Shown here: in pieces, positions 2,765 to 24,800 of the stretch
How the letters are laid out: every line of letters starts with the position of its first letter
Position numbering within the stretch: the stretch's first letter is position 1
Assembly: GCF_002113885.1 (NCBI RefSeq)
Contig: NW_018407496.1
Location: 512,994 to 576,993, forward strand
Direction: 5' to 3'
Length of the DNA stretch: 64,000 nucleotides
Source of the DNA: Mizuhopecten yessoensis
Taxonomy: Eukaryota
Made by a program: the position numbers and the translations under genes
Notes under the pieces: generated by a model
Database searches by the model: none
Seen by the model: the letters and a program-made list of their open reading frames with translations, nothing else
What the model was told of the DNA's origin: nothing

Positions 2765-4453
2765 GTTACAAACGGTACCGACCTCACAGCAAGCACCCAG
2801 TTACCCCGACTACCAAGTTGTGAACGTCTCTGCAGAACGGCTAGAGCGTGATCTTACAGCAGAGCTAAGATCTGATCCGTCCGAGCTTCAACATTGGCCC
2901 TGGTATCATGGGAATATTTCTCGGCAACATGCAGAGAAGATAGTGACTCGTGACGGAGATTTCATTGTGAGAGACTGTATATCCCAGCCTGGAGATTTTG
3001 TACTGACTACTGGTTGTCGTGGAGTACCAATACACTTTGTAATAAATTCTCAAATAACGGAAAGACCTAATTCTAGAACACCAGAAATATCGTACTTTTT
3101 TGAGGATGAGAAGTTTGCTTCAGTTCAGGATTTGATTGACTTTTACATGTCCCACAGGAAAGGGGTCACAAAAGTATCCGGAGCTGTGATAAAAAATCCC
3201 ATTGGTCGAACAATGCCGCTGAGCTACTACGACTCCAAATATGGTAATAAGGCAAGTCTGATTGGTGCGGCAGACTATGCTTATACTCCCACACAGAGCC
3301 CCCATAATAGTCCGTACAATAGCCCCAAAGTCAGTCCTCGGGGTAGTCCAAAGTCGCGACACAAACGGCCACTGCGCACAGGAAGTCAGCCATTGTTGGA
3401 CATAGTGGACACGGTGGAACAGGAGAATACAGTAATGTCAAACATAGATCGGTGTGACAGTCTACCCAGCATTCCAAACAAACTTGGGAGCACTTCATTG
3501 ACAATGAAGAACTCTGTTTCAGCATCAAGTTTACCTCCATATCATGCAAGGTGTGGGAGTGAACCGGTACTGATGGACCCAGGTCTTTTCATTGTAAGTA
3601 ATCGGCAGGGACAGTACCTTCAAGTTTCACCTCCAATGCAAAAACTCACCCCTGCCATTTCTGACAGCAACCTCACCAAGCCTGCTCCTCCCAAACCTAG
3701 TCGTATACCTTCCATTAAATATAAAAAACGGCCCGTAATCCAAGTACGAAATCCCAACATGTACGAAGATGATGGGCGGGACTATTCAGATTATAGTCAG
3801 GTGAAGGAAGGACCTAGTTGGCTAGAACACAACAACTTGTCCAATCAAACAAGAGGATTTCCTGTGGACCAAAATGCCAATTTAGCTGGAGATTCCCATA
3901 TGAGTGATTATGACAATAATTATAACTCCAAGAAAATTCCATACAATATGAATCAAAATCAGGAAACCGTGCCAAACGGAAACTTGAATAACACTGACAG
4001 CCAAAGGTCAAGGTTAACTTCTGATACAAAATTTTCATATTTAGACAATCGCGACTATGCCACGGTTCCAGATACTCCAACCAATAAAACTCCGACCAAT
4101 AAGACAAGTGGTAACAATTTTGAAGATATCTCTAGTTCTGACATGCTCAATAGGTCTAAAGGTAGAACAATCTCTATACCCACTGATAATGTTGGATCAA
4201 CGTTAAACATCCCGAAGTATTCCAGTGATATTTTGCCAGAAGAAAATAAACCTTTGGAAACATCAACATTAGTGACTGTGAAAAGCTTGCTACTTTCAAC
4301 AGATGCGAGAATATTAGCATTACACATGACAAAGATTGACCTTGAGAGCCTTAAGGTTATTACTGACTGTGATCTAGGGGTAGGAGTGGAATCGGGACTG
4401 GAGCTGATCACACTTCCTCAAGGGAAACAACTGCGACAGGACACAATTGAAAG
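2765..4453 (+). CDS. BCAR3: BCAR3/SH2D3C (NSP family) exon: SH2 domain, Ser/Pro-rich linker and start of the RasGEF-like domain
   Basis: Acceptor tttcacag| and donor AG|gtaagc. SH2 motif WYHGNISRQHAEKIVTRDGDFIVRDCISQPGDFVLT. NSP-type segment LGVGVESGLELITLPQGKQLRQDTIER. Confidence 0.9.
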
Positions 4454-4526
4454 GTAAGCAAGCTTGTTATAAATGGTTTACTTTTTTTGCTAAAGACATG
4501 GAACATAAACTGAAATGGTCCCTTCA

Positions 4527-5465
4527 AGTGTAATCAACATCAGTTGTAATCGTAACATCAAGTGTAATCCAAACATCAAATGTAATCTTTTCATCAGGTG
4601 TAATCGTAACATCAGGTGTAATATTTACATCAGGTGTAATCTTTACATCAGATGTAATCGTAACATCAAGTGTAATCCAAACATCAAATGTAATCTTTAC
4701 GTCAGGTGTCATCGTAACATCAGATGTAATTGTAACATCAAGCGTAATCCTAACATCAGGTGTAATCTTTACATCAGATGTAATCGTAACATCAGGTGTA
4801 ATCTTTACATCAGATGTAATCATTACATCAGGTGTAACTTTACATCAGGTGTAATCTTTACATCAGGTGTAATCGTAACATCAGATGTAATCGTAACATC
4901 AAATGTAATCTTTACGTCAGGTGTCATCGTAACATCAGGTGTAATCTTTACATCAGATGTAATCGTAACATCAGATGTAATCGTAACATCAAATGTAATC
5001 TTTACATCAGGTGTCATCGTAACATCAGGTGTAATCTTTACATCAGATGTAATTGTAACATCAAATGTAATCTTTACATCAAGTGTAATCTTTTCATCAC
5101 GTAATCGTTACATCAGGTATAATCTTAACATCAGGTGTAATCTTTACATCAGGTGTAATCTTTACATCAGGTGTAATCTTTACATCAAGTAATCGTAACA
5201 TCAGGTGCAATCATTACATCAGGTGTAATTTTTACATCAGATGTAATCGTAACATCAGTTGTAATCTTTTCATCAGATGTATATAATCGTACCATCAGGT
5301 GTAATCGAAACATCATATGTAATCGTAACATCAAATGTAATCCTTACATCAAGTGTAATCTTTACATCAAGTAATCGTAACATCAGGTGTAATCTTTACA
5401 TCAGGTGTAATCGTAACATCAGATGTAATCGTAAAATCAGGTGTAACCTTTACATCAAGTGTAAT
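4527..5465. repeat. 18-bp intronic minisatellite (~50 units) made of two interleaved variants
   Basis: Units tgtaatctttacatcagg and tgtaatcgtaacatcaga. It produces the spurious CNRNIR and TSDVKI ORFs. Confidence 0.95.
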
Positions 5466-5578
5466 GGGGTTGGTATTTCTACTGAACTACAATAGATATG
5501 GGATTGTTTTTTAATATCAACATGGGCATATTTCCAGATAAATCAGTTGCATAAAATAAAAGTTAGATATCAAGTGTA

Positions 5579-5877
5579 ATGGTAACATCAAATATAATCA
5601 TGTCATTCAAAGTTGCTATGATGTAAAGTGTAATAACTTAGTACCACTCCACTAGTACAAGGCTGGTGGTTAAAGCCTAATTGGAATTTCAAAATAGGGT
5701 TATAAATTTCTATAGTTTGAAAATGTGNTGGTAACATCAAATATAATCATGTCATTCAAAGTTGCTATGATGTAAAGTGTAATAACATAGTACCACTCCA
5801 CTAGTACAAGGCTGGTTGTTATAGTCTAATTGGAATTTCAAAATAGGGTTATAAATTTTGTATAGTTTGAAAATGTA
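5579..5877. other. ~150-bp direct duplication across a single-N join (probable assembly or haplotype overlap)
   Basis: 5579-5727 is nearly identical to 5729-5877, with an N at 5728. Confidence 0.75.
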
Positions 5878-6047
5878 TTAGACTTGTATTAACATATCAT
5901 TCAATTAAATAAGCATGAACAACTAGACTATTGTGTTGTATTGTTTAGTGGATGTAAGTTTAATGTCAATCACTATGCCAAGTTCTCATGCTCTGGAAAA
6001 AAGAAAAGAAAAATGAGGTTGAAACACATTTAAAAGGACTGCAATGG

Positions 6048-6240
6048 TGCATTGGTAGTCGAGTGTTTAAGGCATCTGGCCATCTACGGTCACTAGTCTC
6101 CACCGTTCGAGGCCTACGCGGGGCAGTGGCCAGGCACTGGCGGCATATCAGTGGTTTTCTCTTGGAACTTTGAAGTTTTCTTTCACCTCAAAAACCTGAC
6201 TTGTCCTTAAATGACAATAGCTGTTAGTAGTAAATTAATT
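6048..6240 (+). mobile_element. Degenerate tRNA-derived SINE
   Basis: A-box-like tggtagtcgagtg and B-box-like gttcgaggcc, followed by a gtggttttctc...ttcacctcaaaaacctgac...ccttaaatgac core resembling mollusc SINEs. Confidence 0.6.
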
Positions 6241-6357
6241 TAGCAAAATCAAAAGAACTTTAAAACTGATAAATGTAAAATAGTTCCAGCTGTAAAAGCC
6301 CTACTTAGCTTGAAAGTTTGAGCCAAATATTAATCTTTATTGTGACAATGATTTCAG

Positions 6358-6526
6358 GTGTTACTGTTTGAAATTGTTCACGAGGACGACAATTTTGACG
6401 TGTCAGAAAGTTACGGACCGTGCCAAGATGCTCAGTCAGTGGATAGAGATTGCTCTCCAGCTGAGGGTCACTCTAGGAAACTTGTTTGCTTTCTCTGCTG
6501 TGATGGAAGGACTGGCCAGTACCCAG
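6358..6526 (+). CDS. BCAR3: BCAR3/SH2D3C-like exon, RasGEF-like (CDC25-homology) domain
   Basis: atttcag| ... CAG|gtcagt. A phase-2 entry gives RCYCLKLFTRTTILTCQKVTDRAKMLSQWIEIALQLRVTLGNLFAFSAVMEGLASTQ, which fits the NSP GEF-like helices. This is a different frame from the ORF track. Confidence 0.88.
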
Positions 6527-6955
6527 GTCAGTACTTAGCATTAAAGTAATGTTGTAACCAAGGAAAGTATTGAAAATTTATTTTGTTAGTGGTACCATTT
6601 ATATTGATTTTAAAATCTGTCATCAACGATTTCATTTCCTTATGAACCAGACTGGTAATTTCTGATATTTTCCACCAAGTGCTTTTGAGACATTTCTGTG
6701 CTAATGATCCAACAGATCATGAATTGTTTAAGTGATAAAATGATATATTCCTATCAGTTTTGAGACATGCACTATTCAAGTTATATTGAACCACTTACTG
6801 TTTTGAGATCCATACTTACGTTATCATTTCCTAGAATGCTTGTTAATAGATATAAGTTATCAAAAAGATCAAGTATATCATCATGTAAGTGTTGCTTGAT
6901 TGCTGTGTACACGTTTGACCCCTGTATGAGACTGATGGTAACCTCCTTGTCACAG

Positions 6956-7459
6956 ATCCAGAGGCTGAGGGATACATGGATGGTGTTGAGACAGAATCAT
7001 ACGTCCAGTGCCTTCATCTTCGACACTAAACACAAGGCAGCTCTCAAGTCGCTCAACGACGGCAGTGGCCTACTCCCCCTCCAGAATGTCACCATACCGG
7101 ATATCAGTTCTCTTGTGGTGCTGCTAGAACGGGACGATGAATCTCTGCTAGATTATCTCCCTTGGGAGAATGCAGATCCAAACTCAGGTTTGGATATTTT
7201 GTTGACACATCTTGACACAGCGCGTCTGATCACGGCCCAAGCTGGACTGTACAGTGTCACAGGGCAGGCATTGCTCAACACATTTACCCCAGATACTGAA
7301 CTACTGGATGTGTTTCGCACAGAGTTCCAAATGAAACTACTATGGGGCTCCAAAGGGGCAAGTGTGGAACGGACATTAAGGCTCAATAAATTTGAACAAT
7401 TGTTGGCGGTCTTGTCTAATCGAGCAGAGCCCCCTGGTGATGACGGCACGGAGGTGTGA
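6956..7459 (+). CDS. BCAR3: BCAR3/SH2D3C-like last coding exon (C-terminal Cas-binding GEF-like region)
   Basis: Acceptor cttgtcacag|. IQRLRDTWMVLRQNHT...FRTEFQMKLLWGSKGA...LSNRAEP then TGA. The LWGSKGA motif is typical of NSP proteins. The four-exon model gives 817 aa. Confidence 0.9.
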   Translation: MQRLRDTWMVLRQNHTSSAFIFDTKHKAALKSLNDGSGLLPLQNVTIPDISSLVVLLERDDESLLDYLPWENADPNSGLDILLTHLDTARLITAQAGLYSVTGQALLNTFTPDTELLDVFRTEFQMKLLWGSKGASVERTLRLNKFEQLLAVLSNRAEPPGDDGTEV

Positions 7460-10246
7460 TAGAAATGTGTGCTAGTGATTGAAAGATGTGTGTTGTGTGG
7501 ATTGATTTTCATGGGTGAATGTCTGGGAAAAACTTTCCTGAATTCAAATTTTACCAAGGAAAAATAGCTTGGATGGTAGGAGTCTGTTTTGAGGGTCCCT
7601 AGTAACAGGGATCGGTCTAATGTGTGATTTTAAGTGAGTGGTGAGTGTATTATCAGTATTTTTATGAAGTCTTCCGGAGTCTGTTTATTCCTAAAACTGG
7701 TGCTGGGTCACCATTGGTGNTAAGGACATTCTTAAAATGTATGTAATTCATATTTTTATCAAAATACATTGTACTAAAACATTAAAAGAAAACTATTTTT
7801 AGATTTTGATATCTGAAACAGATTTCTATTAAACCAGAACTGCGTACTATTTTCACAGTCAAGTTTTTTGGACTCTTTGATTTTGCACAATGTTTAAAAA
7901 ATCTGAACTTCTATTTGAATTTTTTAAAACTTATTTGGAAAAAATAAAAAAGCTTTTTCAGTGGGCATTTTATATTATGTATTCTTAATCAAAATGAATG
8001 AAATCACAGCTGCTTTGGAAAAAACAGAACAAGTTTAAATTACAAACTGATTTTAATATTTTTGATGTTTTAGTGTAACAACTGAAATATCTAGATTAAG
8101 ATTGTTTTTGAATTTTCAGTTGTTTTCTTCAGTTATTTGCAAATTGGTGCAGGTCCAGTTGTATGCAAATTAGTGCAGGTCACTTGTCTTACATTAAAGA
8201 GGAAAGTTACAAACAGAAAACTGCATGGTTGTCATTCACTGTATGATTTTTACCAGAATACATGTTGTAAATTTGTAATTGTAAACTACACAACCGTAAG
8301 CTGATATAATCAACACAAGTACAATACAATAAACTCTACTGCATACAGGTGTCCTATATATGTCCCTGTAATAGGCCCTCTAAAAGGATGACTTACAATT
8401 TAGGTTTAACATGAGTTCATGTTTGTACATTTTATTTATATAATATTAGAGTACGTTTCATAAAGATTTTATTGCTAAATGAAACAGGTTTTATTGTAAT
8501 TATTAACTGATGTTACATTTAATAGCTTGGCATCTCTGAAGACTGTGAAAGTAGGAGTAAATCTTCTAGATTAAGTTACAAAATAAAATGAGAAGAATAT
8601 TTTAATGCAATGTGAATGAAGTTATTGAATAAATATGGTATATTTTATTGTATTTCAGAAAGATTTTTTTAAGAATGTAAGTATTGAGCACATGTAACAG
8701 TAACATTGTTTACGTGTAGTGTTAAAACAAACCTATAAATCTTCTGAATCTCATTGTAAAAAGCAACAGTCAATATATGTATTTAAATCATTGGATAAAA
8801 TATTTTAGAGAAGACAAGAATTACGGATTAACACTGCTGGAGCACTACAGTTACCTCCCTTTGTATTATGTGTTATCTTCTTTGATATATATAGGTATAT
8901 ATGACAGACCAGTTTTATATATCTACACATAAGTGTTTTACACTGGTATCATACAAGGTCGATTTTTATTGAGTTTCTATCATCTAAATAAAGAAATACC
9001 AATTTTGCTTACAACTTAAACAGACAGCCAATATGGTTAGTCAGCCACAGGGTATTTTTTAGAAGAAATTTTATTTACAACTTGGATTTGCAAAGAGTGA
9101 ATAAACAATGATTTTTTAATCACAAAAAGTTTGTAAACAGGTACTTCTTCAAAATGGGATAGATGATTTTCCAGTGGAAACCTGAAGAATGAAGTAATTC
9201 ATTAAATGTTTTGATGTGGTACAAGCAAGGTCCATTCTTTTGATTAATCAACAGATGGATAGTATTCCTAGAATGTTGATAGATCATGTAAGTAATTGTT
9301 TGTAACAAGACATTAAATACATCTCAGAAAATAAATATTCAACTACAGTGCCAATGTTAATGAATGAAAAGATATCTGAATATTCATGTTATTATTCATG
9401 AATATTCATGATATATCTGAATATTCATGTTATTATTCCTGACCATTCATGAATTATTCATAGACAGAAACAGTGGTAGCAGGTCTACCCTCATGATTTC
9501 TGATACAATTTGTACACAGAATTATTGAGGTCAGTTTCAAGTCCCAATCCTAAGATAGTTGTACATTTTTGTAATACACTTTTAAGATAAATGGGACACG
9601 TATATATTAATTTTAAGAGATACAAATTTAACCTTCTTTTCATTAATATTGTTCATATCTGTATAGACGGTGAGACTTAAGCGTAGATTATTATCATCTG
9701 GAATATATAAGGTACCAAAAGTGAATAAACAGTTATACTTAAAATTACACTGTATATCACATTTTATATGCATTTAAAAAATATAATAAATAAAAATGAT
9801 ATTAAATTTACATTGGTCTTGAGTTGTTGATTTTATAATCAGTTTTCAAGGATACAATTTTCAGTATCTACCATGTTGAATTGTTACACAATTGGCTGAA
9901 AAGACGTTGCTTCTGATTTGTTCACTGTTTGTGTTGTTGGGTGTCTGACATATCTTTTGCTTGCCAGGAGACATTCATTATTACAGGTATTGTTTGAGCT
10001 TCACCAACCTAGCCGTTGACGAACCCTAGTATGAAACTCAGGTGAAATATCGCTAAGTAATGCTATACAATCTTACATCACACAATTTCAGCTTTCTTAT
10101 ATAACCCGATAAAAGTTAAATAACAGTATGTTAACACTATACGATGACATGTTAGAGATTGAACGAAAAGGCAGAAACTTCCAATTTAATAAAAAATAGG
10201 CTTGTATTGGAGTGTATCGTAGAGGAGCAGAATTATAAGTCTAGTT

Positions 10247-10700
10247 TTAATTAGATTGCAGAAACAACGCGGAACCCGAACTAACGAACGTAAGCATCAC
10301 TGGTGTAATCTCAGAAGAGGGCGAAATTACCCGTTCGCATGGTGTCGCCACAGCAAGTTGGTCTGGAACAGTAACAACGAATATATCTACAGGTGCTGCC
10401 ACAACATTTGAAGTATCATCAGACACGTTTAGATATTGTCTTTTGTGAGAGAGGGAGCTATGGTATCTGGTAAAGCTGCGCGATTCATCCCACATGATTT
10501 GAACCCTAGTTTGGTATTGTGTGCTGTGATGGAAGAATCTTATGCAAGTCTTGGTCATGTCCACTGTAATACAAACTTCCCCGGAGGCAACGGAGTCGAT
10601 TACCTCATTGGAAATGCTCTGATCCCGAATAAGCAATTGTGGACGTTCCGACCCGATTTCCTCAAGGAGTATGTCTCGAGCCAAAGAAATGCCCCAATAT
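10247..10700 (-). pseudogene. Possible relic of an NHL/beta-propeller coding segment
   Basis: GC-richer island with a 145-aa minus-strand ORF. APVDIFVVTVPDQLAVATPCERVI and VCITVDMTKTCIRFF resemble propeller blades of bivalve TRIM-like proteins. The duplicate at 17495-17900 is frameshifted. Confidence 0.3.
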
Positions 10701-11429
10701 ATACAGGATTAGCGGGACTCTGATCTCGATTCAAGCCGCACAGTGTGTTCGGTTTTCAAATTATGGAGACAAGGCTCTGCCTAATGCGTTAATGGAACAG
10801 TCGCGCACCCCCCGAGTTGCCAAGAATACCGAAACCTTTCTCGCTATAACCAAATCTTGTTTATGTTATTCCATTTTTTAAAGAAACCACAAAAATTAAA
10901 CTCGTGAACAATTTTATGTCCCACCTGATCTGCCCAAGTTTTCCTCTTGCAAATGGAGTCTTCAGCTTCATATTCGTAGCCAGGCGAGAAGCTTTCCCAA
11001 GCAACTGTTACACGGAAATCCTAAATCTTCCACTACTTAATATATCGCTCTCGAAAATAGTTTTCCTGCTAGAATGTGCTCAAATCAACATTCTTGTAAC
11101 TCGCTTAAATCATATCAAACGATCAAAACATAAAATTAAAACATTGAAAACAGTATTCGACTTTAAGTCTCTTCAAAGATTTTCCAAATCATTGACAAAA
11201 TAAAGTTTTATAATCGAGTTATTACCGGAAAAAGAAATCAGGCTTGAGCACATACTCCATGCTTGAGCATGAGAACGGTTTCATGAATACGGGCTCTGGT
11301 CTCATACTTGACCACTTTAACTTTGATTTCTATCCTTCCAGTATTTTTTTCGAAATATTTCCTTCCGGTTGGTAAATACAAATTGTACAAAGCTTCATAT
11401 AGCACAATCAGGGAGTTATATTTATATAT

Positions 11430-11660
11430 GACGTTTTGATGATAGTAACATCACTGAATCTCCAACTGACGGTGTCTATATGTCACAGTTGATCTGCTAT
11501 TCAAGAAGTTATCATAATGCCCGTGATATATGTCGAATGATGAGGAGCAAACTTACAACACAGGGTTTCCAAATATGCAGATTTTTATGAAGATTGTGGA
11601 AAACTTTTCTAGTAGCCATCATCCTCCCATAGGGAAACGTGCTATTTCTTTATGTGATAT
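11430..11660 (+). mobile_element. Penelope-like retroelement RT C-terminal fragment (degenerate)
   Basis: Translates as DSNITESPTDGVYMSQLICYSR...KLTTQGF, matching the SNIP.SP.YGVY.SQL.RY.R motif. A duplicate lies at ~19400-19640. Confidence 0.65.
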
Positions 11661-11799
11661 GAAGGTCAATGTTTATTTTTAATTATGCTTATTAGTGTGC
11701 CTCGTTGTTCCGTTGTCAGTACCTCGTGTTACACAAGAAATGACCAGCAAAATAACTGAGTTCAGTATAAATGCTGATTATTAAGGGATAACATATATA

Positions 11800-11965
11800 A
11801 CATAGGAGAACTCTTGAATATTCTGACAAAATATTTGAATGATTTATAAAGAGGACATGCAAGACCTCATTTAGAATATGTCAACCATGTGTGGAGTCCG
11901 CTCTTCTTTAATGAAACATAGAGAATTAATTCAACATGCCTACAGAAAAGCCACTAAATTAAGGG
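11800..11965 (+). mobile_element. CR1-type LINE RT fragment (degenerate)
   Basis: RPHLEYVNHVWSP...KHRELIQHAYRKATKL, compared with the CR1 consensus RPHLEY...VWSP....IE.VQRRATKL. Confidence 0.65.
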
Positions 11966-12696
11966 TATGTGATTCAATTCCCTCCTAGAACGACTCTTAA
12001 TCTCCCTGCCTCCTGATTGGCTTATAGACGCGTTAGAGAAGGTAAAATCGAGCTATCTAATTTAACCTGGCATTAATATGACTCTAATATGTCAAATCTC
12101 ATATCAAACAGCAATATAATACTGCTACACATGGGAATGGGGTACACAAACAAACTATCTAAGATAGAACGTGTTAACGATAAATGTCATTCCGTCATAT
12201 CTAGAACAGTCTACCCTCTGAAATGACGTCTAAATAACTTCTGGTGAATTATTGAATAAACAAAATGAAACGCTATAATCATACGGGACCAATCCCCCGT
12301 TGGTAATATTGGATTAATTAACCACATCATCAGACGAACTCTTTTAACATGAGTAATGACTTCACTTAACAATATGTACGATTACTGGGCACATATGCAA
12401 TGTCAAACAAACATCACTACTTCGGTAATAAATAATCACTATGAATACGAAGAGCTTTATTTCAGTAAGTCGATCGAGAAAGCCAAAGAGAACTGCACCA
12501 TTTTTCCATTAGGACTCATCAGTTGGAAAAAATAAAAATCAGGAAAAACAAAATACTTTATGTAGAAATGTAGTAAATGGGGAAGTGTTCATAAAACCGT
12601 TTGCAATGGCTTTTACTATTTTATAACTTATGACCGCAACAAATATTTTATTCTTAAACTACGTATTTCATGTACACCCTGCTGGAATCAGTTTCA

Positions 12697-12925
12697 TCTA
12701 CAAGGTTACGGCCAATGTAACGACCAATAGTCCAGCTACAAGGTTACGGCCAATGTAACGACCGATAGTCCAGCTACAAGGTTACGTCCAATCTAACGAC
12801 CAATAGTCCAGCTACAAGGTTACGGCCAATGTAACGACTGATAGTCCAGCTACAAGGTTACGGCCAATCTAACGACTGATAGTCCAGCTACAAGATTACG
12901 GCCAATGTAACGACTGATAGATAGT
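12697..12925. repeat. 38-bp minisatellite (~6 copies) upstream of the TRIM-like gene
   Basis: Unit tacaaggttacggccaatgtaacgactgatagtccagc, starting at 12699, 12737 and so on. Confidence 0.95.
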
Positions 12926-13315
12926 CCATCAGCTGAGTCTACCACCTTGTGGCGTTAAATTATCACTAAACCACGGCAGATAATAAAATGCACCATATGA
13001 CCAGATTACTGTTTGTTCTTTATTGTATTGATCTGATATAGGATGACTATTTGCGCATGCTCCGATGGTATGAATGCATATGAGATAGTGACGATAAAAC
13101 ATACATTTGTATATTAGAACAGCCTCATCACTAAAATATACCTGTACATGATTCGTGAAGGACATGTGTGTTAAAATGTAAGGATATACTATAATCAATT
13201 GTTTCTTCGTTCTTGGGAAATACTTCGGTATTGTGGTTGAATTATCCATCCGTTCTGAACGTGTGACAATACTGTAACACTACACAATAAGTGATACGTG
13301 ATTTGTGAATTAGTA

Positions 13316-15034
13316 ATGGCTGAAAGTCTAACACAACAGGGAGGTCAAATTCCAATTCGTGTAAAGGGACAGAATTCATGTATTTATCACCATGGGAAAT
13401 CGTCGGTGTTGTTTTGTGAAAATTGTCAAGACATTGCCTGTACCGAATGTACGTCTTCAATTCACAGCGGTCACAACTTTTTGACTCTGAGTAACGTTTC
13501 TACAAAAAAGAAAAAGAAACTTCAAAAGTTAATAAGCAAAAAAGAAACAGATGGCATTCCTTCAATAAGGAAAAGTATCAAATCCATTGACGTCGAGATC
13601 AAGGAAACCGAAGCCACATTTGAAAGCCTTGCCGCGGACGTAACGAAACAGAGAGATAAACTAAAGCGGAAAATAGATTTACTTGCAGACCAAACACTCG
13701 CTGTGTACGAGAAACTAAAAATAGAAAACGTAACTCTATTGAAGGACTACAAGAAAGAACACGAAAACCATTTCGCGATGTTAAAGGGTCAGATAGAGAA
13801 TTGTAGGTCTCTGATCCAGACTGGAGATGATATCACCGTGTATGACAGTGATGCCAATATTGAATCCCCAGTAGCGTTGCCAGTAAAGCCGACACTAAAC
13901 ACGGCCAGTTTTTCTGCGAACCTAATGCCGCTTGACAACCTCAAACAAGCGTTCGGTACAGTGATGAAAGACAAAAATCCTAGTAATGTCCCAGTGGTAA
14001 GAAAATCTGGCAATGAAGTACCCAAGGACAAGGAAGAAGCAACAGAACAACAAACAGGTAAATTACCCGAAGGTGTCGTCCCCCCGAAAGAACAACGAGC
14101 TGGACAATCTAATAAACAACAGTCAGAATCATCTCCAAAACTTCAACCCGCTTCGAACCAACCATATACACCTTTTAGCCAACCTGAAGAGGAGAATCAA
14201 ACCCCAGTTATAGCACATCCTTGGTCATCTAGACCGTTGCATAATCAGTCAAGAAGGAAGAAGACGAGGAATAAGGAAACCCCATCTCAGCCGCGTCCAC
14301 AGAACAATTCTGTACGGCAGCCTTTGGAAAGGGAAATCATCATTCCCATTACCGTGATGGCGAAAATGCGAAATGGCGACACATGGATAGACGATACTTA
14401 TCTACGAACCATCGTGCGTATTGACAGGAGCGGAAGATTACTAGACACCATAGATCATAGAAGGCAAATCACAGACTTTAGTTTCTCCAATGAAAAGCAA
14501 GAACTTTGGATTTGTTCAATTGACGATAATAGCGTCATCGAGGTGACGTCAGCGCCACCAACTCCTAGGTTCTACACAGACGAGTCCCCTTTATGTATCT
14601 GTGTGACCATGGATGGCCATCTCATCGTCGGCATGTCAAAACAAATAACCAAATTCAACAGCCAAGGAGGCGTCATCATCACAACTAAGCCAACCCTTTT
14701 TTCATTGTTCAGCAAACCGATTGTTTGCCTGCCAAGGCATATCGCTGAATGTCCCGTGACAAAAAATATCGCCGTGGCGGACCGGTCATCAATGAATGTA
14801 TTGGTAATGGACAAACATTTTAATGAGTTATTTCGATACCCCCAGCAAACGCAGATAAATCCCTCGGCGATCTCGGTTGAGCAATTCATTCCTAATCGGC
14901 TTTCCTATCACAAAGATGGATGCATTATCATCGAAGACATTGGAAACAATACCTGGCACCACACTAGTGGTATTGGTGAGCCGTATGGATATTTCCATAG
15001 AAATGATGCAACGGGATTAATTCGTGGCAAATGA
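13316..15034 (+). CDS. Intronless RING-less TRIM-like protein (B-box 2, coiled coil, Q/P/E-rich linker, NHL-like beta-propeller), 572 aa
   Basis: B-box CIYHHGKSSVLFCENCQDIACTECTSSIHSGH. Heptad-rich helix at aa ~60-170. Propeller blades PLCICVTMDGHLIVG and PRHIAECPVTKNIAVADRSSMNVLVMD. Confidence 0.85.
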   Translation: MAESLTQQGGQIPIRVKGQNSCIYHHGKSSVLFCENCQDIACTECTSSIHSGHNFLTLSNVSTKKKKKLQKLISKKETDGIPSIRKSIKSIDVEIKETEATFESLAADVTKQRDKLKRKIDLLADQTLAVYEKLKIENVTLLKDYKKEHENHFAMLKGQIENCRSLIQTGDDITVYDSDANIESPVALPVKPTLNTASFSANLMPLDNLKQAFGTVMKDKNPSNVPVVRKSGNEVPKDKEEATEQQTGKLPEGVVPPKEQRAGQSNKQQSESSPKLQPASNQPYTPFSQPEEENQTPVIAHPWSSRPLHNQSRRKKTRNKETPSQPRPQNNSVRQPLEREIIIPITVMAKMRNGDTWIDDTYLRTIVRIDRSGRLLDTIDHRRQITDFSFSNEKQELWICSIDDNSVIEVTSAPPTPRFYTDESPLCICVTMDGHLIVGMSKQITKFNSQGGVIITTKPTLFSLFSKPIVCLPRHIAECPVTKNIAVADRSSMNVLVMDKHFNELFRYPQQTQINPSAISVEQFIPNRLSYHKDGCIIIEDIGNNTWHHTSGIGEPYGYFHRNDATGLIRGK

Positions 15035-16661: not shown

Positions 16662-18199
16662 ACATGTTGTAAATTTGTAATTGTAAACTACACAACCGTA
16701 AGCTGACATAATCAACAAAAGTACAATACAATAAACAATTAACTCTACTACATACAGGTGTCCTATATATGTCCCTGTAATAGGCCCTCTAAAAGGATGA
16801 CTTAAAATTTAGGTTTAACATGGGTTCATGTTTGTACGTTTTATTTATATAATATCAGAGTACGTTTCATAATGATTTTATTACTAAATGAAACAGGTTT
16901 TAATGTAATTATCAACTGATGTTACATTTAATAGCTTGGTTTCTCGGAAGATTGGTAAAATTAGGAGTAAATCTTCTAGATTAAGTTACAAGATAAAATG
17001 AGAAGATAATTTTAATGCAATGTGAATGAAAAGGTATTGAATAAATATGGTATATTTTATTGTTATTCAGAAAGCATTTTTTAAAATGTAACTATTGAGC
17101 ACATGTAACAGTAGCATTGTTTATGTTTAGTGTTAAAACAAAACTATAATCCTTCTGAATCTCAATGTAAAAAGCAAAAGTCAATATATGTATTTAAATC
17201 ATTGGATAAAATATTTAAGAGAAGACAATTACAAATTAACACTGCTGGAGCATAACAGTTGCCTCCCTTTGTATAATGTGTTATCTTCTTTGATATATAT
17301 TGGTATATATATGACAGACCAATTTTATATATCTACACATAAGTGTTTTACACTGGTATCATACAAGGTCGATTTGTATTGAGTTTCTTTCATCTAAATA
17401 AAGGAAAACCAATGCTGCTTACAACTTAAACAGACAGCTAATATGGTTAGTCAGCCACAGTGTATTTTTTAGAAGGAATTTTATTTACAACTGNGAATAC
17501 GAATATATCTACAGGTGCTTCCACAACATTTGAAGTATCATCGGGCACGTTTAGATATTGTCTTTTGTGCGAGAGGGAGCTATGATATCTGGTATAGCTG
17601 CCGGATTCATCCCACACGACTTGAACCCCAGTCTGATATTGTGTGCTGTGATGGAAGATTCTTATGCAAGTCTTGGTCATGTCTACCTAATACCAACTTT
17701 CCCGGAGGCAACGGAGCCACCTCATTGGAGATGCTCTGATCCCGAATAAGCAATTGTGGACGTTCCGACCCGATTTCCTCAAGGAGTATGTCTTAAGCCA
17801 AAGAAATGCCCCATTATATACAGGGTTTACTTGTAATGTTCTCGGTGAGTTAGCGGGACCCTGATCTCGATTCATGCCGCACAGTGATTCGGTTTTCAAA
17901 ATATGGAGACAAGGCTCTGCCCGCTGCGTTAATGCATAATGGAACAGTCCCCCAAGCGGTTATAGTCCATCTCTCAATCCTTATACCTAAACCGATAGCT
18001 TAAAATCCATGTAGGAGTGAAGTAGCTCCAGCGATAAAAAACAACAACATACATACACATAAAAAGTAACGGTGACCTTGGCCTTGACCATGGCACCCTG
18101 AAACAAGCTCGTTCGAGACCTGTTCGCATACTTGACCACTTTAACTTTGATTTCTCTATATATATATCCTTCCAGTAAATAAGTCGCTAGACCGGTGAC

Positions 18200-18760
18200 A
18201 AAATATGACCATACGTTCAATTCAATTCAAACTTTATTGGAAACTTTATTGGAAAAACTTAATGGTACTTAGTAGCATCCTACAATGCAACTGCTAGAAT
18301 ATATCCTTGTTAACGGACCATGTTCATTGTACATGCATATAATAGTGAAGTATTTAATTATAAATATGACCCTCGTTCTAAAATCACCAAGTACTGTTTA
18401 CGAACGGACAGCTTTATCCCCTGATGCATGTATCCTTCCAACCTGATAAATCTTATTGAAGATATGTGGTCAGGTAGACTGGCTACTAGCCGCTAAGTTT
18501 TTATGAAGAATGTGCTAGCTACATTTGCTACTGGCTTATCTGCCCCTAGTTTGAGAACTTAGACATCCAAGTGATCAAACGTACAAGAATTTACATTTTC
18601 AAAATAATTCAATATTCTAGTGATGGAGGCCAGTCTAATGGTAGCAGGGTGATGTTACAAAGGTGGTCACGAACTAAGGGACACACCTCCTAGGTATCTC
18701 TTCAAGTAGCCTAACCATCTAGCACAAAGAACATAGCAGGCAAATTAGAAACTCTTTCGA
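18200..18760 (-). mobile_element. Probable 3' end of a degenerate LINE, in a segment present only in unit B
   Basis: The minus strand reads caataaagtttgaattgaattgaa, i.e. a poly(A) signal plus a (TTGAA)n tail. Segment ~18177-19310 is absent from unit A. Confidence 0.35.
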
Positions 18761-18818
18761 TTTCCACATTAGTAGCAACCTGTGTAAACCAGACATTTAA
18801 ATTTAGTTTAGGTTAAAC

Positions 18819-18845
18819 CACGGAATTATGCTATCTAAGTCCGTG
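18819..18845. mobile_element. 27-bp palindromic micro-element with a 7-bp target-site duplication (GTTAAAC)
   Basis: gttaaac[cacggaattatgctatctaagtccgtg]gttaaac. Confidence 0.75.
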
Positions 18846-19705
18846 GTTAAACTAAATGTACATTGTTCCTCCGTCTACAGCTGTAAAGAACTGCGTGAAA
18901 CTATTGTCCGACGTGTCTAATCTCAGTTGTATCATAGTTCACTGATAAGATTAGGGACACTGATATATATACGCATGGATGTGTACAGTGAAATATTACA
19001 CATTTAGTGTCATTGTATCGGTAACACATATTGGGAGATTTCTCAAAAATACGTGTGCAGTATGTCGAAAGTAGGATAGTATGGGGAGATATGATCGGGG
19101 AATGGTAGCGCGAAAGGGAAACACGACGTTTTACTTTAAAGTTAGGTAATGTAATCAACCCAATCCATTCCAAACGCTTAATTTTCTTTAATGTACCAAT
19201 GACTATCAATGCATGCATTTCTCATGATGCATTGAGGTCGATTTGTGTAAACTTCAACAATCGGGTTTCCTCTTAATTAGAAAAAAAACCCATCTTAAAC
19301 ACACAAGGATACTTTTTCGAAATATTTCCTTCCGGTTGGTAAATACACATTATACAAAGCTTTTAATACCACAACCAGTGAGTTATTTATAAATGACGTT
19401 TTGATGATAATAACATCACTGAATCTCCAACTGACGATGTTTATATGTCACAGTTGATCTGCTATTCAAGAAGTCCGCCGAATATCATAATTTCCGTGAT
19501 ATATGTCGAATGATGAGTGGCAAACTTACAACACGGGGTTTCCAAATATGCAGATTTTTATGAAGATTGTGGAAAAGTTTTCTAGTAGCCATTATCCTCC
19601 CATAGGAAAACGTGCTATTTCTTTATGTGAAATGAAGGTCAATGTTTATTTTTAATTATGCTTATTAGTGTGCCACGTTGTTCCGTTGTCAGTACCTCGT
19701 GTTAC

Positions 19706-19732
19706 CACGGAATTAGATTATCTAAGTCCGTG
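19706..19732. mobile_element. 27-bp palindromic micro-element with a 7-bp TSD (GTGTTAC); empty site at 11726-11732
   Basis: gtgttac[cacggaattagattatctaagtccgtg]gtgttac, whereas the paralogue reads acctc-gtgttac-acaag. Confidence 0.85.
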
Positions 19733-21068
19733 GTGTTACACAAGAAATGACCAACAAAATAACTGAGTTCAGAATGTGGATTACTAAGGGACAACACATT
19801 CCGCACTAGTGGTAGTGGTGACCTTATGGATATTTCTTTGGAAATGTTGCAATGTGCTAAATGCTTATCGGTGAGGGACTGTAAAACGGCTGAATATGGC
19901 AACCATCCTTTATATTTTGGGTAACTGATTTCAATTATTTGTCCGTTTGACGGATGCAAACACTGCATGAGACTAACGTATGCCACATCCTATCTTATTT
20001 GTATAATATGTTACGGATAAGATGAAGACGCACGTGACTGTGTATGACGTGACTGTGTGTAATGTAACATTATCATTTATTGCCCTTGTTTGAGCAAGTA
20101 TTTTAAAGAGCGAAGACACAGTACAAACTTTACCACAGCTCCAGTACAAAGTACGTCGTCGGAAAAACACTGGGACAAAATAAACAATTCTGTNCCACTA
20201 AACTAAGGGTATGTGATTCAATTCCCTCCTAGAACGACTCTTAATCTCCCTGCCTCCTGATTGGCTTATAGACGCGTTAGAGAAGGTAAAATCGAGCTAT
20301 CTAATTTAACCTGGCATTAATATGACTCTAATATGTCAAATCTCATATCAAACAGCAATATAATACTGCTATACATGGGAATGGGGTGCACAAACAAACT
20401 ATCTAAGATAGAACGTGTTAACGATCTCATTCCGTCATATCTAGAACAGTCTACCCTCTGAAATGACGTATACAAAACTTATTTTTCTTGGACATCATTG
20501 AAAAAACAAAATGAAACGCTGTAATGATAGGTGACCTATCCCCCGTTGGTAATATTGGATTTATTATATGGTTATTATAACCACATCATCAGACGAACTC
20601 TATTAACACGAGTAATGGCTTCGTTCAGCAATATGTACGATTACTGTACACATATTCAATATCACACAAACATCACTACTTAGGTAATACATAATCAGTA
20701 TAAATACGAAGAGCTTTATTTCAGTAAGTCGATCGAGAAAGCCAAAGGGAACTTGACCATTTTGCCGTTAGGGCTCATCAGTGGTTAAAAATGAAAATCG
20801 GATAAAACAAAATACTGTATGTAGAAATGTAGTAAATGGGGAAGTGTCAATAAAATCGTTTACAATGCCTTTTACTATTTTATAACTTATGACCGCCATT
20901 TTGCCATTAGGACTTATCAGTGGTTAAAAATAAAAATCGGGCAAAACAAAATACTATATATAGAAATGTAGCAAATGGGGAAGTGTCAATAAAACCGTTT
21001 ACAATGCCTTTTACTATTTTATAACTTATGACCGCAACAAATATTTTATTCTTAAACTGAATCAGTTC

Positions 21069-21335
21069 CAGCTACAAGGTTACGGCCAATCTAACGACTG
21101 ATAGTCCAGCTACAAGGTTACGGCCACTATAACGACTGATAGTCCAGCTACAAGGTTACGGCCAATGTAAGTTCTGATATACCAGCTACAAGGTTACGGC
21201 CACTATAACGACTGATAGTCCATCTACAAGGTTACGGCCAATCTAACTACTGATAGTCCAGCTACAAGGTTACGGCCAATCTAACGACTGATATTCAAGC
21301 TACAAGGTTACGGCCAATCTAACGAGTGATAGTCC
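21069..21335. repeat. 38-bp minisatellite (~7 copies), paralogue of 12697-12925
   Basis: Same tacaaggttacggccaatctaacgactgatagtccagc unit. Confidence 0.95.
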
Positions 21336-21640
21336 ATCAGCTGAGTCAACCACCTTGTGACGTTAGATTATCACTACAACACGAGATATCCTTTGTAAAA
21401 CATAAATTAAGTCGATACTGAAAACTAAACGCTGTGAACATTTAAACAACACCATGTGGCCAGGTTGTTTGTTCTTGATTGTATTGATCTGATATAGGAG
21501 GACTATTTAAGTCCTACTGTCAAAATAAAAAGAAGATATCTTTGTTTAATTGTCTTACACAATACGTGATGTTTTGCACATGCTCCAATGTCTTGCTCAA
21601 GTGCATATGAGATAGAGGCGATAAATCATACATTTGTATT

Positions 21641-21710
21641 AGTCTCGTTCAACCAGACACGTGTTGTCTGTGCAAGGTACGAGTTACCAAGCGTCTGGTT
21701 GAACGAGACT
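21641..21710. mobile_element. 70-bp MITE with perfect 18-bp TIRs
   Basis: agtctcgttcaaccagac ... gtctggttgaacgagact. The direct repeat tacatttgta flanks both sides (21629-21638 and 21711-21720). It is absent at the paralogous site ~13100. Confidence 0.8.
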
Positions 21711-21887
21711 TACATTTGTAGATTCGTGTAAGGACGTGTGTGTTAAAATGTAAGAATATGCTATAATCAATTGTTTCTTCGTTCTTGGGAAATACTTCGG
21801 TATTGTGGTTGAATTATCCATCCGTTCTGAACGTGTGACAATACTGTAACACTACACAATAAGTGATATGTGATTTGTGAATTCGTA

Positions 21888-24800
21888 ATGGCTGAAAGTC
21901 TAACACAACAGGGAGGTCAAATTCCAATTCGTGTAAAGGGACAGAATTCATGTATGTATCACCATGGGAAATCATCGGTGTTGTTTTGTGAAAATTGTCA
22001 AGACGTTGCCTGTACCGAATGTACGTCTTCGATTCACAGCGGTCATGACTTTTTGACTCTGAGTAACGTTTCTGCAAAGAAGAAAAAGAAACTACAAAAG
22101 TTAATAGGCAAAAATGAAACAAATGGCCTTCCTTCAATAAGGAAAAGTATTAAGTCTATTGACGCCGAGATCAAGGAAACCGAAGCCACATTTGAAAGCC
22201 TTGCCGCGGACGTAACGAAACAGAGAGATAAACTAAAGCGGAAGATAGATTTTCTTGCAGACCAAACACTCGCTGTGTACGAGAAACTAAAAATAGAAAA
22301 CGTGACTCTATTGAAAGACTACAAGATAGAACACGAAAACCAATTCGCGATGCTAAAGAGTCAGATAGAGGAATGTAGGACTCTGATCCAGACTGGTGAT
22401 GATATCACCGTGTATGACAGTGATGCCAATATTGAATCCCCAGTAGCGTTGCCAGTAAAGCCGACACTAAACACGGCCAGTTTTTCTGCGAACCTAATGC
22501 CGCTTGACAACCTCAAACACGCGTTCGGTACAGTGACGAAAGACAAAAATCCTAGTAATGTCCCGTTGGTAAGAAATCCTGGCAATGAAGTACCCAAGGA
22601 CAAGGAAGAAGCATCAGAACAACAAACAGGTAAATTACCCGAAGTTGTCGTCTCCCCGACAGAACAACGAGCTGCAAAATCTGATAAACAACAGTCAGAA
22701 TCATCTCCAAAACTTCAACCCGCTTCAAACCAGCCATGTAAACCTTTTAGACAACCTGAAGAGGAGAATCGAACCCCCGTTATAGCACATCCTTGGTCAT
22801 CTAGACCGTTGCGTAATCAGTCGAGAAGGAAGAAGGCGAGGAATAAGCAACCCCTATCTCAGCAGCGTCCACAAAACAATTCCGTGCAGCAGCTTGTGGA
22901 AAGGGAAATCATCATTCCTATTACTGTGATTTCGATGATGCGAAATGGTGGCATAAGGATGAAGAATACTTACATAAAAGCCATCGTACGTAATGACAGG
23001 AGTGACAGGGAAATCACATATTTTATTTCTTTAATTACTTTTTTTCTTTTTCTTTATTTGTTTATTTTCAAAGTATTTTTCACATTACAATAACATTTAC
23101 ATTTCATTAAACATAATGAATTCCACTTTCACACATACTTTCATACTATTTAATATTGCCCTTTTTGTAAGTGGTATTTTTTTTTTTTTTTAATGTTATA
23201 TAAGAAAGGTAGGAAAATCAGATAAGAGAAACAAGAAAACAAAGCATAGTGGAAATAAAGACAGGTAAATGGACGGAAAGAAAGACAGAAAGACAGACAG
23301 ACAGACGGAAAGATAGACAGACAGGAGGAGAAGTACCAGTATTTAACAAACCAATGTAAAGGATAGAAGTCTGGTAATATATAGGTGTCAGTAGCTAAGT
23401 AATTAAGATAATACATTGTATGTTTCAAATTTGTCCCTTTATTTCAAATGAATTTAAATAAGATCATATAATCGGTAAAATGTAGGTCTAGGAAATATCG
23501 ATAAGCCTTTTCCATTTTTTCCACTCATTCTTGAAGTTAATGAGATATATTTCGTCTTTACTATTTGCAATATATTTTTAAATACTGTAATGTTCTTTAA
23601 TTGAATTTTTAATTCCTTGTATAGATAAAGGCACTTTAAGACATCTTGCCTTGTATATATACTGTTTTATTATTAAAATAATACTATTGTCAATTTTATT
23701 AAGTCCATTATAGTTATAAAAACCAAAAAGAAATGTTGTTTATTATAATCAAATGGAATAATCAATGCATCTAATAAGAACTCAAAATTTTGTAAAAGAT
23801 TTTGTGCTTTGTCACATTCCCATAATACTTGCTCTATTGTCTCTTTTTCTAGTTTACACAGTTCACAGTAAGGGCTATCTACTATTCCTGCCTTAAACAA
23901 ATACGCATTAGTTGTCAAAATATGCTGATAAATTCTGAACTGGAACCACTGTAATTTGGTATTTTTCGTAATTTTAAATGGCATTTATATATTTTTTCCA
24001 AACTTCATCATCAAATTGAAATATATCATCCCATTTTTTTACCTGTTGAAATAGTATCATTTTTACAAAACAAGCTATAAAAATCTCTTATCGCCTTTTT
24101 ATTTTTCAAAAACACTTCTATATTAATTGGTATAAATTTATAGTTAACCTCTACATTTGACCTATCTTCTTGTATTACATACTCTCTAATGGCTGTAATT
24201 AGACCCTGGTATCGTAAAAAGTTTGTATTAATATCATAAATCTGTTTGAATTATTGAAATGTGTATAAAGCATAGATATTTCGGTCTCTGATTAGATCAT
24301 CAATTACAATTATTCCTTTATTGTACCATTCCCTGTAAAATCTGCTTCTATTTTCTATTGAAATACTTTTGTTATACCAGATGGGCATTTTGAACTTACT
24401 GCTAGGGGACTTATATTTTTTATTAATTTTTCTCCATGCCTTAAATACATCAATCCAAAATAGATTTTTAGTTTTATTTAGACATTTCGAAATATAATCA
24501 GTTCCACAATTTGCCAAAATGTTTTTATCACAATATAATTTTACAATCACTTGCCATTTACCAGAATTCATATATAACCCCTAACCAACGTTAATTTTAA
24601 CGAGTCAATAAACGACTGTACATGTAACATTTTAGGACCCCCTTTAATATAATCTTTAACAATGACATCTCTCTTAGCTTTATCTATTTTACTATTCCAC
24701 AGAAAATTAAAAAGCTCTATATTTTTTTTTTTTTAAGAAATCAATCATCTGGATTAGGTAAAGAGATAAAAAAGGTGATTGAATTGTGAAATTAATAATG

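What the first reader, a model, noticed from the sequence alone, without database searches (positions are those of the whole stretch)
18812..19739. 27-bp hairpin micro-transposon with 7-bp GTnnnAC target duplications, and an empty paralogous site in the window
Seen in the sequence: two near-identical 27-bp palindromes (cacggaatta....atctaagtccgtg) lie in unrelated contexts. Each is flanked by its own exact 7-bp direct repeat (GTTAAAC at 18812/18846, GTGTTAC at 19699/19733). The paralogue at 11726-11732 has a single GTGTTAC and no insert, which points to an insertion event. Established knowledge: CA...TG termini and 7-bp TSDs with a palindromic GTnnnAC preference characterise Galileo-type members of the P-element superfamily. 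Inference: a non-autonomous element reduced to two abutting ~13-bp TIRs, either mobile in its own right or an internal-deletion remnant, and too short for standard repeat annotation.
Basis: partly seen in the sequence, partly recalled or inferred. Interest (0 to 1): 0.75.

Follow-up and report, generated by a model that had tools for sequence, protein, structure and literature searches.

The report
Excision scars of a P-type transposon
The two 27-letter palindromes are repair scars left where a cut-and-paste jumping gene, probably of the fruit-fly P-element type, inserted and later cut itself out of the scallop genome. The mechanism is known, about 1,500 such scars exist, and the element that made them was not found.

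Summary
Two 27-bp near-palindromes (18819-18845 and 19706-19732) each lie between exact 7-bp duplications, and the paralogue at 11726-11732 is an empty site. The "mobile micro-transposon" reading does not hold.

- **Census:** this scallop genome (988 Mb) holds about 1,513 sites with the same two ends. Reversed-pattern controls gave 0.
- **Junctions:** total lengths run from 22 to about 55 bp, and the variation sits at the centre. Longer copies always extend the same left end (up to 17-18 nt) and right end (up to 17 nt). The common forms are the joins predicted from 1-3-nt microhomologies.
- **Meaning:** this is the signature of end-joining after excision with a long staggered cut, as in the Drosophila P element (17 nt).
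- **The two window copies** have different junctions, so they are separate events.
- **Target sites:** duplications are strictly 7 bp, within a palindromic motif TnnGTnnnACnnA, which fits the P/Galileo type.
- **Parent:** none was found for this family. A sister scar family (CAGAGACGTAT…) carries the ends found beside a P-type transposase gene and on its internally deleted copy.

Other agents of this scan reached the same reading on other DNA of this genome. The mechanism is known, so interest is moderate.

The parts
18812..18818 (+). Left copy of the 7-bp target-site duplication GTTAAAC of scar 1
   Evidence: identical to 18846-18852
18819..18845 (+). Scar 1: 10-11 nt of the transposon's left end joined to 16-17 nt of its right end (variant …GCTATC…), with no microhomology
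   Evidence: class 27/10/17/0; present in contigs of 3 other individuals, and partly covered in a fourth
18846..18852 (+). Right copy of the duplication GTTAAAC of scar 1
19699..19705 (+). Left copy of the 7-bp target-site duplication GTGTTAC of scar 2
19706..19732 (+). Scar 2: 15 nt of the left end plus 15 nt of the right end overlapping by the 3-nt microhomology TTA. This is the commonest junction class in the genome.
19733..19739 (+). Right copy of the duplication GTGTTAC of scar 2
11726..11732 (+). Empty paralogous target site: a single GTGTTAC with no insert
   Evidence: The flanks are 97% identical to those of scar 2 over 163 nt.

Best explanation
Both palindromes are excision footprints. 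A cut-and-paste DNA transposon inserted at each site and duplicated 7 bp of target. Its left end begins CACGGAATTAGATTAGAT… and its right end finishes …TGTTATCTAAGTCCGTG (one variant has …TGCTATC…). When it later excised, the transposase cut one strand at the element boundary and the other about 17-18 nt inside each end. The flanking DNA therefore kept long single-stranded tails of transposon end sequence. Host end-joining paired or trimmed these tails and sealed the break. This left target duplication, part of the left end, part of the right end, then target duplication again. The anatomy (shown) matches what is known for the Drosophila P element, so a P-superfamily transposase is the most likely agent (inferred). 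The scars are inert. They cluster in short regions, either because the element re-inserted nearby or because it favoured certain regions. The parent element is absent from the assembly, or nearly so (shown by failed searches). The family therefore probably died out and left about 1,500 or more scars.
For: (1) Census with exact 10-nt and 12-nt end anchors: 130 sites with a 0-2-nt gap, 1,005 with 3-9 nt and 378 with 10-40 nt. All reversed-pattern controls gave 0.
(2) In 53 scars of 34 bp or more, the left consensus holds to position 17-18 and the right consensus to position 17, then both collapse to background. Among scars with filler, right-end retention of 17 nt is far above chance (22 of 35 scars that reach 16 nt also reach 17). 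Retention of 18 nt is at chance level.
(3) Of 146 independent sites, 77 have 1-3 nt of junction microhomology, 16 are blunt and 53 carry 1-31 nt of filler.
(4) The dominant 27-mer (32 of 146) is the join through TTA, the longest microhomology available near the tips. The second mode, 35 bp, equals 18+17 nt joined blunt. No 28-mers occur.
(5) A prediction was tested. The same microhomology rules predict a 22-mer (TTA at left positions 8-10) and a 24-mer (AT). In the 22-24-bp class these two make up 41 and 45 of the first 100 rows.
(6) The duplication is exact at 7 bp in 97 of 146 sites and within one mismatch in 119 of 146. Other lengths give 0-4 matches, and an offset control gives none within one mismatch.
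(7) The target motif is the palindrome T(-3)nnGTnnnACnnA(+3). This is the GT…AC type described for P, 1360 and Galileo (PMC4168063).
(8) A 17-nt staggered cut is the hallmark of P transposase (PMC7776569, PMC10983969). [quoted passage not shown]
(9) Link in the same genome: a sister scar family has 803 sites. Its 5' end lies 328 bp upstream of an ORF with the TNP-like RNaseH_N, GTP-binding insertion and RNaseH_C domains. Its 3' end lies on an internally deleted copy. Scars join exactly these two ends, keeping about 18 and 17-19 nt.
(10) The genome has 25 matches to the P-transposase RNaseH_N domain.
Against: No parent element with these termini was found, so no transposase is tied directly to this family. 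Non-scar hits of the 18-nt left end (about 7 of 100 rows) share no interior sequence, and nor do those of the 18-nt right end (7 of 33). Three candidates have no right end within 8 kb. No P-transposase locus that I fetched carries the termini. The cut position is inferred from retention limits and was not measured biochemically. The left limit, 17 or 18 nt, is not resolved. Identity of about 430 copies of the 27-mer would also fit amplification of a unit, although microhomology explains it. An apparent empty allele at scar 2 in two individuals is best explained as cross-mapping from the paralogue, so no occupied, empty or scarred polymorphism was shown.
Confidence: 0.8

Rival explanations
1. 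The 27-bp palindrome is itself a minimal non-autonomous transposon (two abutting TIRs) that a transposase mobilises in trans and has amplified to hundreds of copies.
For: About 43% of the 25-31-bp class are the identical 27-mer, or about 430 sites. Each has its own 7-bp duplication. No longer parent is found.
Against: Lengths form a series from 22 to 55 bp and the variation is confined to the centre. Longer members extend one consistent left sequence and one consistent right sequence, then stop at 17-18 nt. The abundance of each length class follows the available microhomology, including the predicted 22- and 24-mers. The two window copies differ by three adjacent central bases, which fits two junctions and not point mutation. 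By established knowledge of P elements (PMC7776569, figure 4 legend), transposase binding sites lie inside the element beyond the TIRs. A 27-bp unit would lack them and is too short to bend into a paired-end complex (inference).
Confidence: 0.05
2. They are extreme internal-deletion derivatives made by interrupted homology-directed gap repair (SDSA) after excision, like KP-type deleted P elements. On this reading they are not joins of the staggered-cut overhangs.
For: Internal deletion does occur in this genome. The sister family's copy L063 joins the 3' terminus to the middle of the transposase gene.
Against: Abortive gap repair should give a broad size range with arbitrarily long end retention. 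Here retention stops at 17-18 nt on each side. Everything longer than about 36 bp consists of filler, not more parent sequence, and counts fall steeply above 36 bp.
Confidence: 0.05
3. They are excision footprints, but of a transposon outside the P superfamily whose transposase also makes a long staggered cut.
For: No transposase is linked to this family. The termini have no clear similarity to the sister family's P-type termini (7 of 13 bases match, compared by eye).
Against: Four features together are known only for P-type elements: 7-bp duplications, the GT…AC palindromic target motif, CA-initiated 13-bp TIRs and about 17 nt of retention (PMC7776569, PMC4168063, PMC10983969). Scars of identical build in the same genome carry the ends seen next to a P-type transposase gene and on its deleted copy. 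The two families also share insertion hotspots.
Confidence: 0.1

Closest known systems
Excision footprints of the Drosophila melanogaster P element (17-nt staggered donor cleavage followed by end-joining)
   Same: Each side retains up to about 17-18 nt of transposon end between the two copies of the target duplication. Junctions show microhomology, blunt joins and filler. Events cluster locally, and the target motif is palindromic (PMC7776569, PMC3878927).
   Different: The duplication is 7 bp, not 8. The TIR is 13 bp, not 31. The host is a bivalve mollusc. The scars are seen as about 1,500 fossil events in a wild genome rather than in laboratory excision assays, and no parent copy survives in the assembly.
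Galileo and 1360 (P superfamily, Drosophila)
   Same: They have 7-bp duplications with the consensus GTANTAC/GTATTAC inside a palindromic target motif that extends beyond the duplication (PMC4168063). Here the motif is TnnGTnnnACnnA.
   Different: Galileo has foldback TIRs of hundreds of bp or longer. Here the two ends diverge after 13 bp. The outer motif base differs: T at -3 here, against AANGT in Galileo. Only 20 of 119 sites carry the full GTnnnAC.
Zebrafish Pdre2 / THAP9-type P-like elements
   Same: They have short 13-bp TIRs that begin with CA, and they are P-type elements outside insects (PMC10983969).
   Different: Pdre2 has 8-bp duplications and extant full-length and deleted copies. 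For the scallop family only scars are found.
Tc1/mariner footprints
   Same: The logic is the same: transposon-end nucleotides from a staggered cut remain between the duplicated target bases (PMC3878927).
   Different: Only 2-3 nt are retained per side and the target is TA. Such footprints cannot be recognised from sequence alone, unlike the 22-40-bp scars here.

Membership tests
P superfamily of DNA transposons (P, 1360, Galileo, THAP9-type) | A transposase with an RNase H fold interrupted by a GTP-binding insertion domain (usually with an N-terminal THAP domain), encoded between the termini | tested here: inconclusive
   No element with these termini was found. The genome does encode such transposases: 25 RNaseH_N hits, and one ORF with PF21787, PF21788 and PF21789 lying 328 bp inside a terminus of the sister scar family.
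P superfamily of DNA transposons (P, 1360, Galileo, THAP9-type) | Target-site duplication of 7-8 bp | tested here: met
   The 7-bp duplication is exact in 97 of 146 independent sites and within one mismatch in 119 of 146. Other lengths give 0-4 matches, and the offset control gives none within one mismatch.
P superfamily of DNA transposons (P, 1360, Galileo, THAP9-type) | A palindromic target motif with GT…AC at the edges of the duplication, extending beyond it | tested here: met
   Counts out of 119 sites: T at -3 in 84, G at position 1 in 65, T at position 2 in 94, A at position 6 in 95, C at position 7 in 70, and A at +3 in 83. Compare PMC4168063.
P superfamily of DNA transposons (P, 1360, Galileo, THAP9-type) | [quoted passage not shown] | tested here: met
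   This is indirect. Retained end sequence is bounded at 17-18 nt on the left and 17 nt on the right, with a second length mode at 35 bp (18+17). Cleavage itself was not assayed.
P superfamily of DNA transposons (P, 1360, Galileo, THAP9-type) | Short TIRs that begin with CA, plus internal transposase-binding sites | tested here: inconclusive
   The TIR is 13 bp with one mismatch (CACGGAATTAGAT against CACGGACTTAGAT). Subterminal binding sites cannot be examined without the parent.
Galileo (foldback-like P-superfamily element) | [quoted passage not shown] | tested here: not met
   The left and right ends stop being inverted repeats after position 13 (…TAGAT against …AACA).
MITE / minimal non-autonomous transposon | A unit of defined length and sequence that transposes as such, so that copies differ by scattered substitutions | tested here: not met
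   Lengths run from 22 to 55 bp. The variation is confined to the centre and follows microhomology and filler rules.

The most novel reading that the evidence does not exclude
The identical 27-mer class, or part of it, may be a genuinely mobilisable minimal element: two 13-15-nt ends back to back that a P-type transposase can still cut out and re-insert. It would be the smallest transposable unit known. On this reading some of the ~430 identical copies arose by transposition rather than by ~430 independent identical repairs.
Probability: 0.04. Interest if true: 0.85.

Novelty: new member of a known kind. Interest (0 to 1): 0.4.

Why it matters
Each scar records one germline insertion, one excision and one repair event. 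About 1,500 of them form a natural catalogue of how a mollusc germline repairs double-strand breaks with long 3' tails: the use of microhomology, blunt fill-in joins and filler. They also give in-vivo evidence that the long staggered cut holds in a lophotrochozoan. According to the papers I read here, that cut has been established biochemically for the Drosophila P element. The scars show that a transposon family can disappear from an assembly and still leave a countable trail. They also warn annotators that abundant 22-40-bp "hairpin repeats with TSDs" are scars, not MITEs. The mechanism itself is already known, so this extends existing knowledge and does not overturn anything.

Tried and rejected
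- **Left-end search for the parent.** The 18-nt left end gave 321 hits. About 94% of the listed rows are scars, and the rest share no interior sequence. I fetched three candidates over 8 kb and found no right end. A fourth, L043, is a scar that has lost its right end.
- **Right-end search for the parent.** The 18-nt right end, with the commonest scar join (an A before it) excluded, gave 33 hits. The 7 non-scar hits share no interior.
- **P-transposase loci.** Twelve loci, plus 10-kb extensions of three of them, contain no CACGGA(A/C)TTAGAT terminus with up to 3 mismatches. One inverted repeat in L199-L200 is internal and is not a TIR.
- **Metagenome scan.** The 18-mer gave 11 hits, none with a right end, which I take for chance matches.
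- **Resequencing.** Contigs of two individuals skip exactly 34 bp at scar 2. However, the paralogue differs at only 5 of 163 flanking bases, two of the changes listed at this place are paralogue states (19593C, 19631T), and the match ends after 40 nt, exactly where the paralogue has an indel. I therefore rejected this as polymorphism. A joint between the two scars (18848 to 19706) is most likely an artefact of their similarity.
- **Templated filler.** 16 of 27 fillers of 5 nt or more share a 5-mer with nearby sequence, against 12 of 27 after shuffling. This is not significant, so I make no claim.
- **Mismatch-tolerant count of the 27-mer.** The 1,476 hits are inflated, because the reverse complement differs by only 3 bases. 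I used the figure only as a rough guide.

Full report
**1. Observation.** The coordinates and sequences are exactly as reported.
- Copy 1 is GTTAAAC, a 27-bp core at 18819-18845, then GTTAAAC.
- Copy 2 is GTGTTAC, a 27-bp core at 19706-19732, then GTGTTAC.
- The window holds an ~8-kb tandem duplication (about 9000-13900 against 17400-22500).
- The segment 11346-11732 aligns to 19313-19705, and 11726-11793 aligns to 19733-19796. The single GTGTTAC at 11726-11732 therefore matches both copies of the duplication, which makes it a textbook empty site.
- A blind scan of the window for any short inverted-repeat core between identical 7-mers returns only these two. Shuffles return none.

**2. Census.** The window lies in a 988-Mb genome in 82,659 contigs.
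- With exact anchors (the first 10 nt and the last 12 nt), the end pair occurs 130 times with a 0-2-nt gap, 1,005 times with 3-9 nt and 378 times with 10-40 nt. That is about 1,513 sites.
- The reversed pattern was never found.
- I fetched 162 sites with flanks. Collapsing sites with near-identical flanks leaves 146 independent sites, because some scars were later copied along with other repeats.

**3. Why these are scars and not elements.** The length varies, and the variation sits at the centre.
- In scars of 34 bp or more, the left side reads one consistent sequence to position 17-18 (…GATTAGAT). The right side reads one consistent sequence to position 17 (TGTTATC…, with a variant TGCTATC…). 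Beyond these points the columns fall to background composition.
- Among scars with filler, 22 of the 35 that keep at least 16 nt of the right end keep the 17th. The 18th is at chance level. The left limit is 17 or 18.
- Of the 146 sites, 77 join through 1-3 nt of microhomology, 16 are blunt and 53 carry 1-31 nt of filler.
- The commonest form, the 27-mer of copy 2, is 15+15 nt sharing TTA. This is the longest microhomology available near the tips of the two tails.
- The second length mode, 35 bp, is 18+17 nt joined blunt. No 28-mers occur.
- I then tested a prediction. The same rule predicts a 22-mer (TTA at left positions 8-10) and a 24-mer (AT). In the 22-24-bp class these two account for 41 and 45 of the first 100 rows.
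- Copy 1 of the window is a different junction: 10-11 nt of the left end and 16-17 nt of the variant right end. The two window copies are therefore independent events and not copies of one unit.

**4. Target sites.**
- The duplication is 7 bp and nothing else. It is exact in 97 of 146 sites and within one mismatch in 119. Other lengths give 0-4 matches, and an offset control gives none within one mismatch.
- Rebuilt empty sites give the palindromic motif T(-3)nnGTnnnACnnA(+3).
- The full GTnnnAC is present in only 20 of 119 sites, so it is a preference and not a rule.

**5. Mechanism and family.**
- P transposase cuts with an unusually long 17-nt stagger (PMC7776569, PMC10983969). [quoted passage not shown]
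- Galileo has 7-bp duplications with the consensus GTANTAC inside a longer palindromic motif; P and 1360 share a similar GT…AC palindromic motif (PMC4168063).
- Zebrafish Pdre2 has 13-bp TIRs that begin with CA (PMC10983969).
- The scallop scars fit all of these features.
- Other mechanisms do not retain transposon ends at the donor site. hAT elements form hairpins on the flanking DNA, and piggyBac forms them on the transposon ends (PMC3878927). That Transib and RAG behave like hAT is established knowledge, not checked here.

**6. The parent.** I could not find it.
- Non-scar occurrences of the 18-nt left end and right end share no interior sequence.
- Three candidates have no partner end within 8 kb.
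- P-transposase loci do not carry the termini.
- A metagenome scan gave only hits that look like chance matches.
- The genome does encode P-type transposases: 25 hits to PF21787, in several families.

**7. The sister family.**
- One terminus lies 328 bp upstream of an ORF carrying TNP-like RNaseH_N, the GTP-binding insertion domain and RNaseH_C (L073).
- The opposite terminus lies on an internally deleted copy, L063.
- The genome holds 803 short sites of this family. Several of them join exactly these two ends, keeping about 18 nt and 17-19 nt.
- This ties scars of this build to a P-type element in this genome.
- For the CACGGA family the link remains by analogy.
- The 3' end of the L073 copy itself was not found.

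**8. Clustering.**
- Six of about 55 distinct 3-kb loci centred on a scar hold a further independent scar of the same family, against about 0.3-0.5 expected.
- Five of those loci also hold scars of the sister family, six in total, against about 0.1-0.3 expected.
- The window pair, 887 bp apart, is typical of this pattern.
- Local hopping is known for P elements (PMC7776569). Co-clustering of two different families points at least partly to shared regional hotspots.

**9. History of the window sites.**
- Scar 2 arose after the tandem duplication. The paralogous flanks differ at 5 of 163 bases.
- Its left flank is the end of an old interspersed repeat with at least 40 copies at 71-78% identity.
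- The flanks of scar 1 are unique in the genome.
- Contigs span scar 1 in three individuals (X3, X10, X13), and a contig in X2 reaches into it. A contig spans scar 2 in X13, and one in X2 reaches into it. The four individuals come from three studies.
- A 34-bp skip at scar 2 in two runs is best explained as cross-mapping from the paralogue, so polymorphism is not shown.
- Mismatches between the two copies of each duplication average about 0.43 per pair. That is roughly 3% divergence per copy since insertion, and some of it may reflect imprecise repair. The exact anchors bias the sample towards young scars, so the true number of scars is higher.

**10. Verdict.** The P-superfamily affinity and the insertion logic are right. 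The "micro-transposon" is not a transposon but the repair scar of one. Other agents of this scan reached the same reading on other DNA of this genome. I reached mine before reading their notes and tested it independently. The mechanism is known. What is new here is the scale of the record, the host, and the apparent loss of the parent family.

Noticed in passing
L073 (G000:C5526:66000-75999), terminus at about 7207-7218 on the - strand, ORF 3711-6890 (-); L063 terminus at 526: This is a P-type transposon of a sister family. Its 5' end, CAGAGACGTATAAAGCCAG…, lies 328 bp upstream of an ORF with RNaseH_N, a GTP-binding insertion domain and RNaseH_C. The ORF is interrupted by an assembly gap. L063 is an internally deleted copy that carries the 3' end. 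The genome holds 803 short scars of this family.
   Followed up: partly
L007, L019, L036, L048, L049 (3-kb loci centred on CACGGA scars): Scars of the CAGAGACGT family lie within 72-851 bp of CACGGA-family scars in five of about 55 loci, against about 0.1-0.3 expected. The two families share insertion hotspots.
   Followed up: partly
G000:C2573:389066-389126 (row): This is a scar within a scar. A 27-mer appears to have been hit by a second insertion and excision of the same family, in the opposite orientation, which duplicated the 7 bp GATTATC inside the first scar.
   Followed up: no
L049 (G000:C657:711404-711451): The 13-nt filler of this CACGGA-family scar contains ACGTCTCTG, the terminus of the sister family. 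A sister-family scar lies 25 bp downstream. This may be templated filler or nested events.
   Followed up: no
L001, L002, L028 and others (flank …GTTTGGC); L023, L048, L051, L059 (flank CCCATAC); G000:C4496:388131-389483: Some scars were later multiplied as passengers of other repeats. There were 7 copies with one flank in the sample, and a 24-mer scar repeats 7 times in a ~1.3-kb array. The number of independent events is therefore roughly 10% below the raw counts.
   Followed up: partly
window 9000-13900 and 17400-22500; 12609-12995 and 20983-21407: This is an ~8-kb tandem duplication at 82-97% identity, varying by segment. Each copy holds a 38-bp minisatellite. Each ends in an ORF with a B-box zinc finger (21870-23093, 407 aa; paralogue from about 13150), which looks like a tandem TRIM-like gene pair. 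The scars lie 2.1 and 3.0 kb upstream of the second ORF.
   Followed up: partly
window 18785-19076: One contig of individual X10 skips 292 bp and has ACC in their place, which removes scar 1 and its surroundings. This may be a deletion allele.
   Followed up: no
window 19480-19696: This stretch belongs to an old interspersed repeat family with at least 40 copies at 71-78% identity. Some copies lie beside ~48-bp tandem arrays. The homology ends within a few bases of the scar-2 target site.
   Followed up: no
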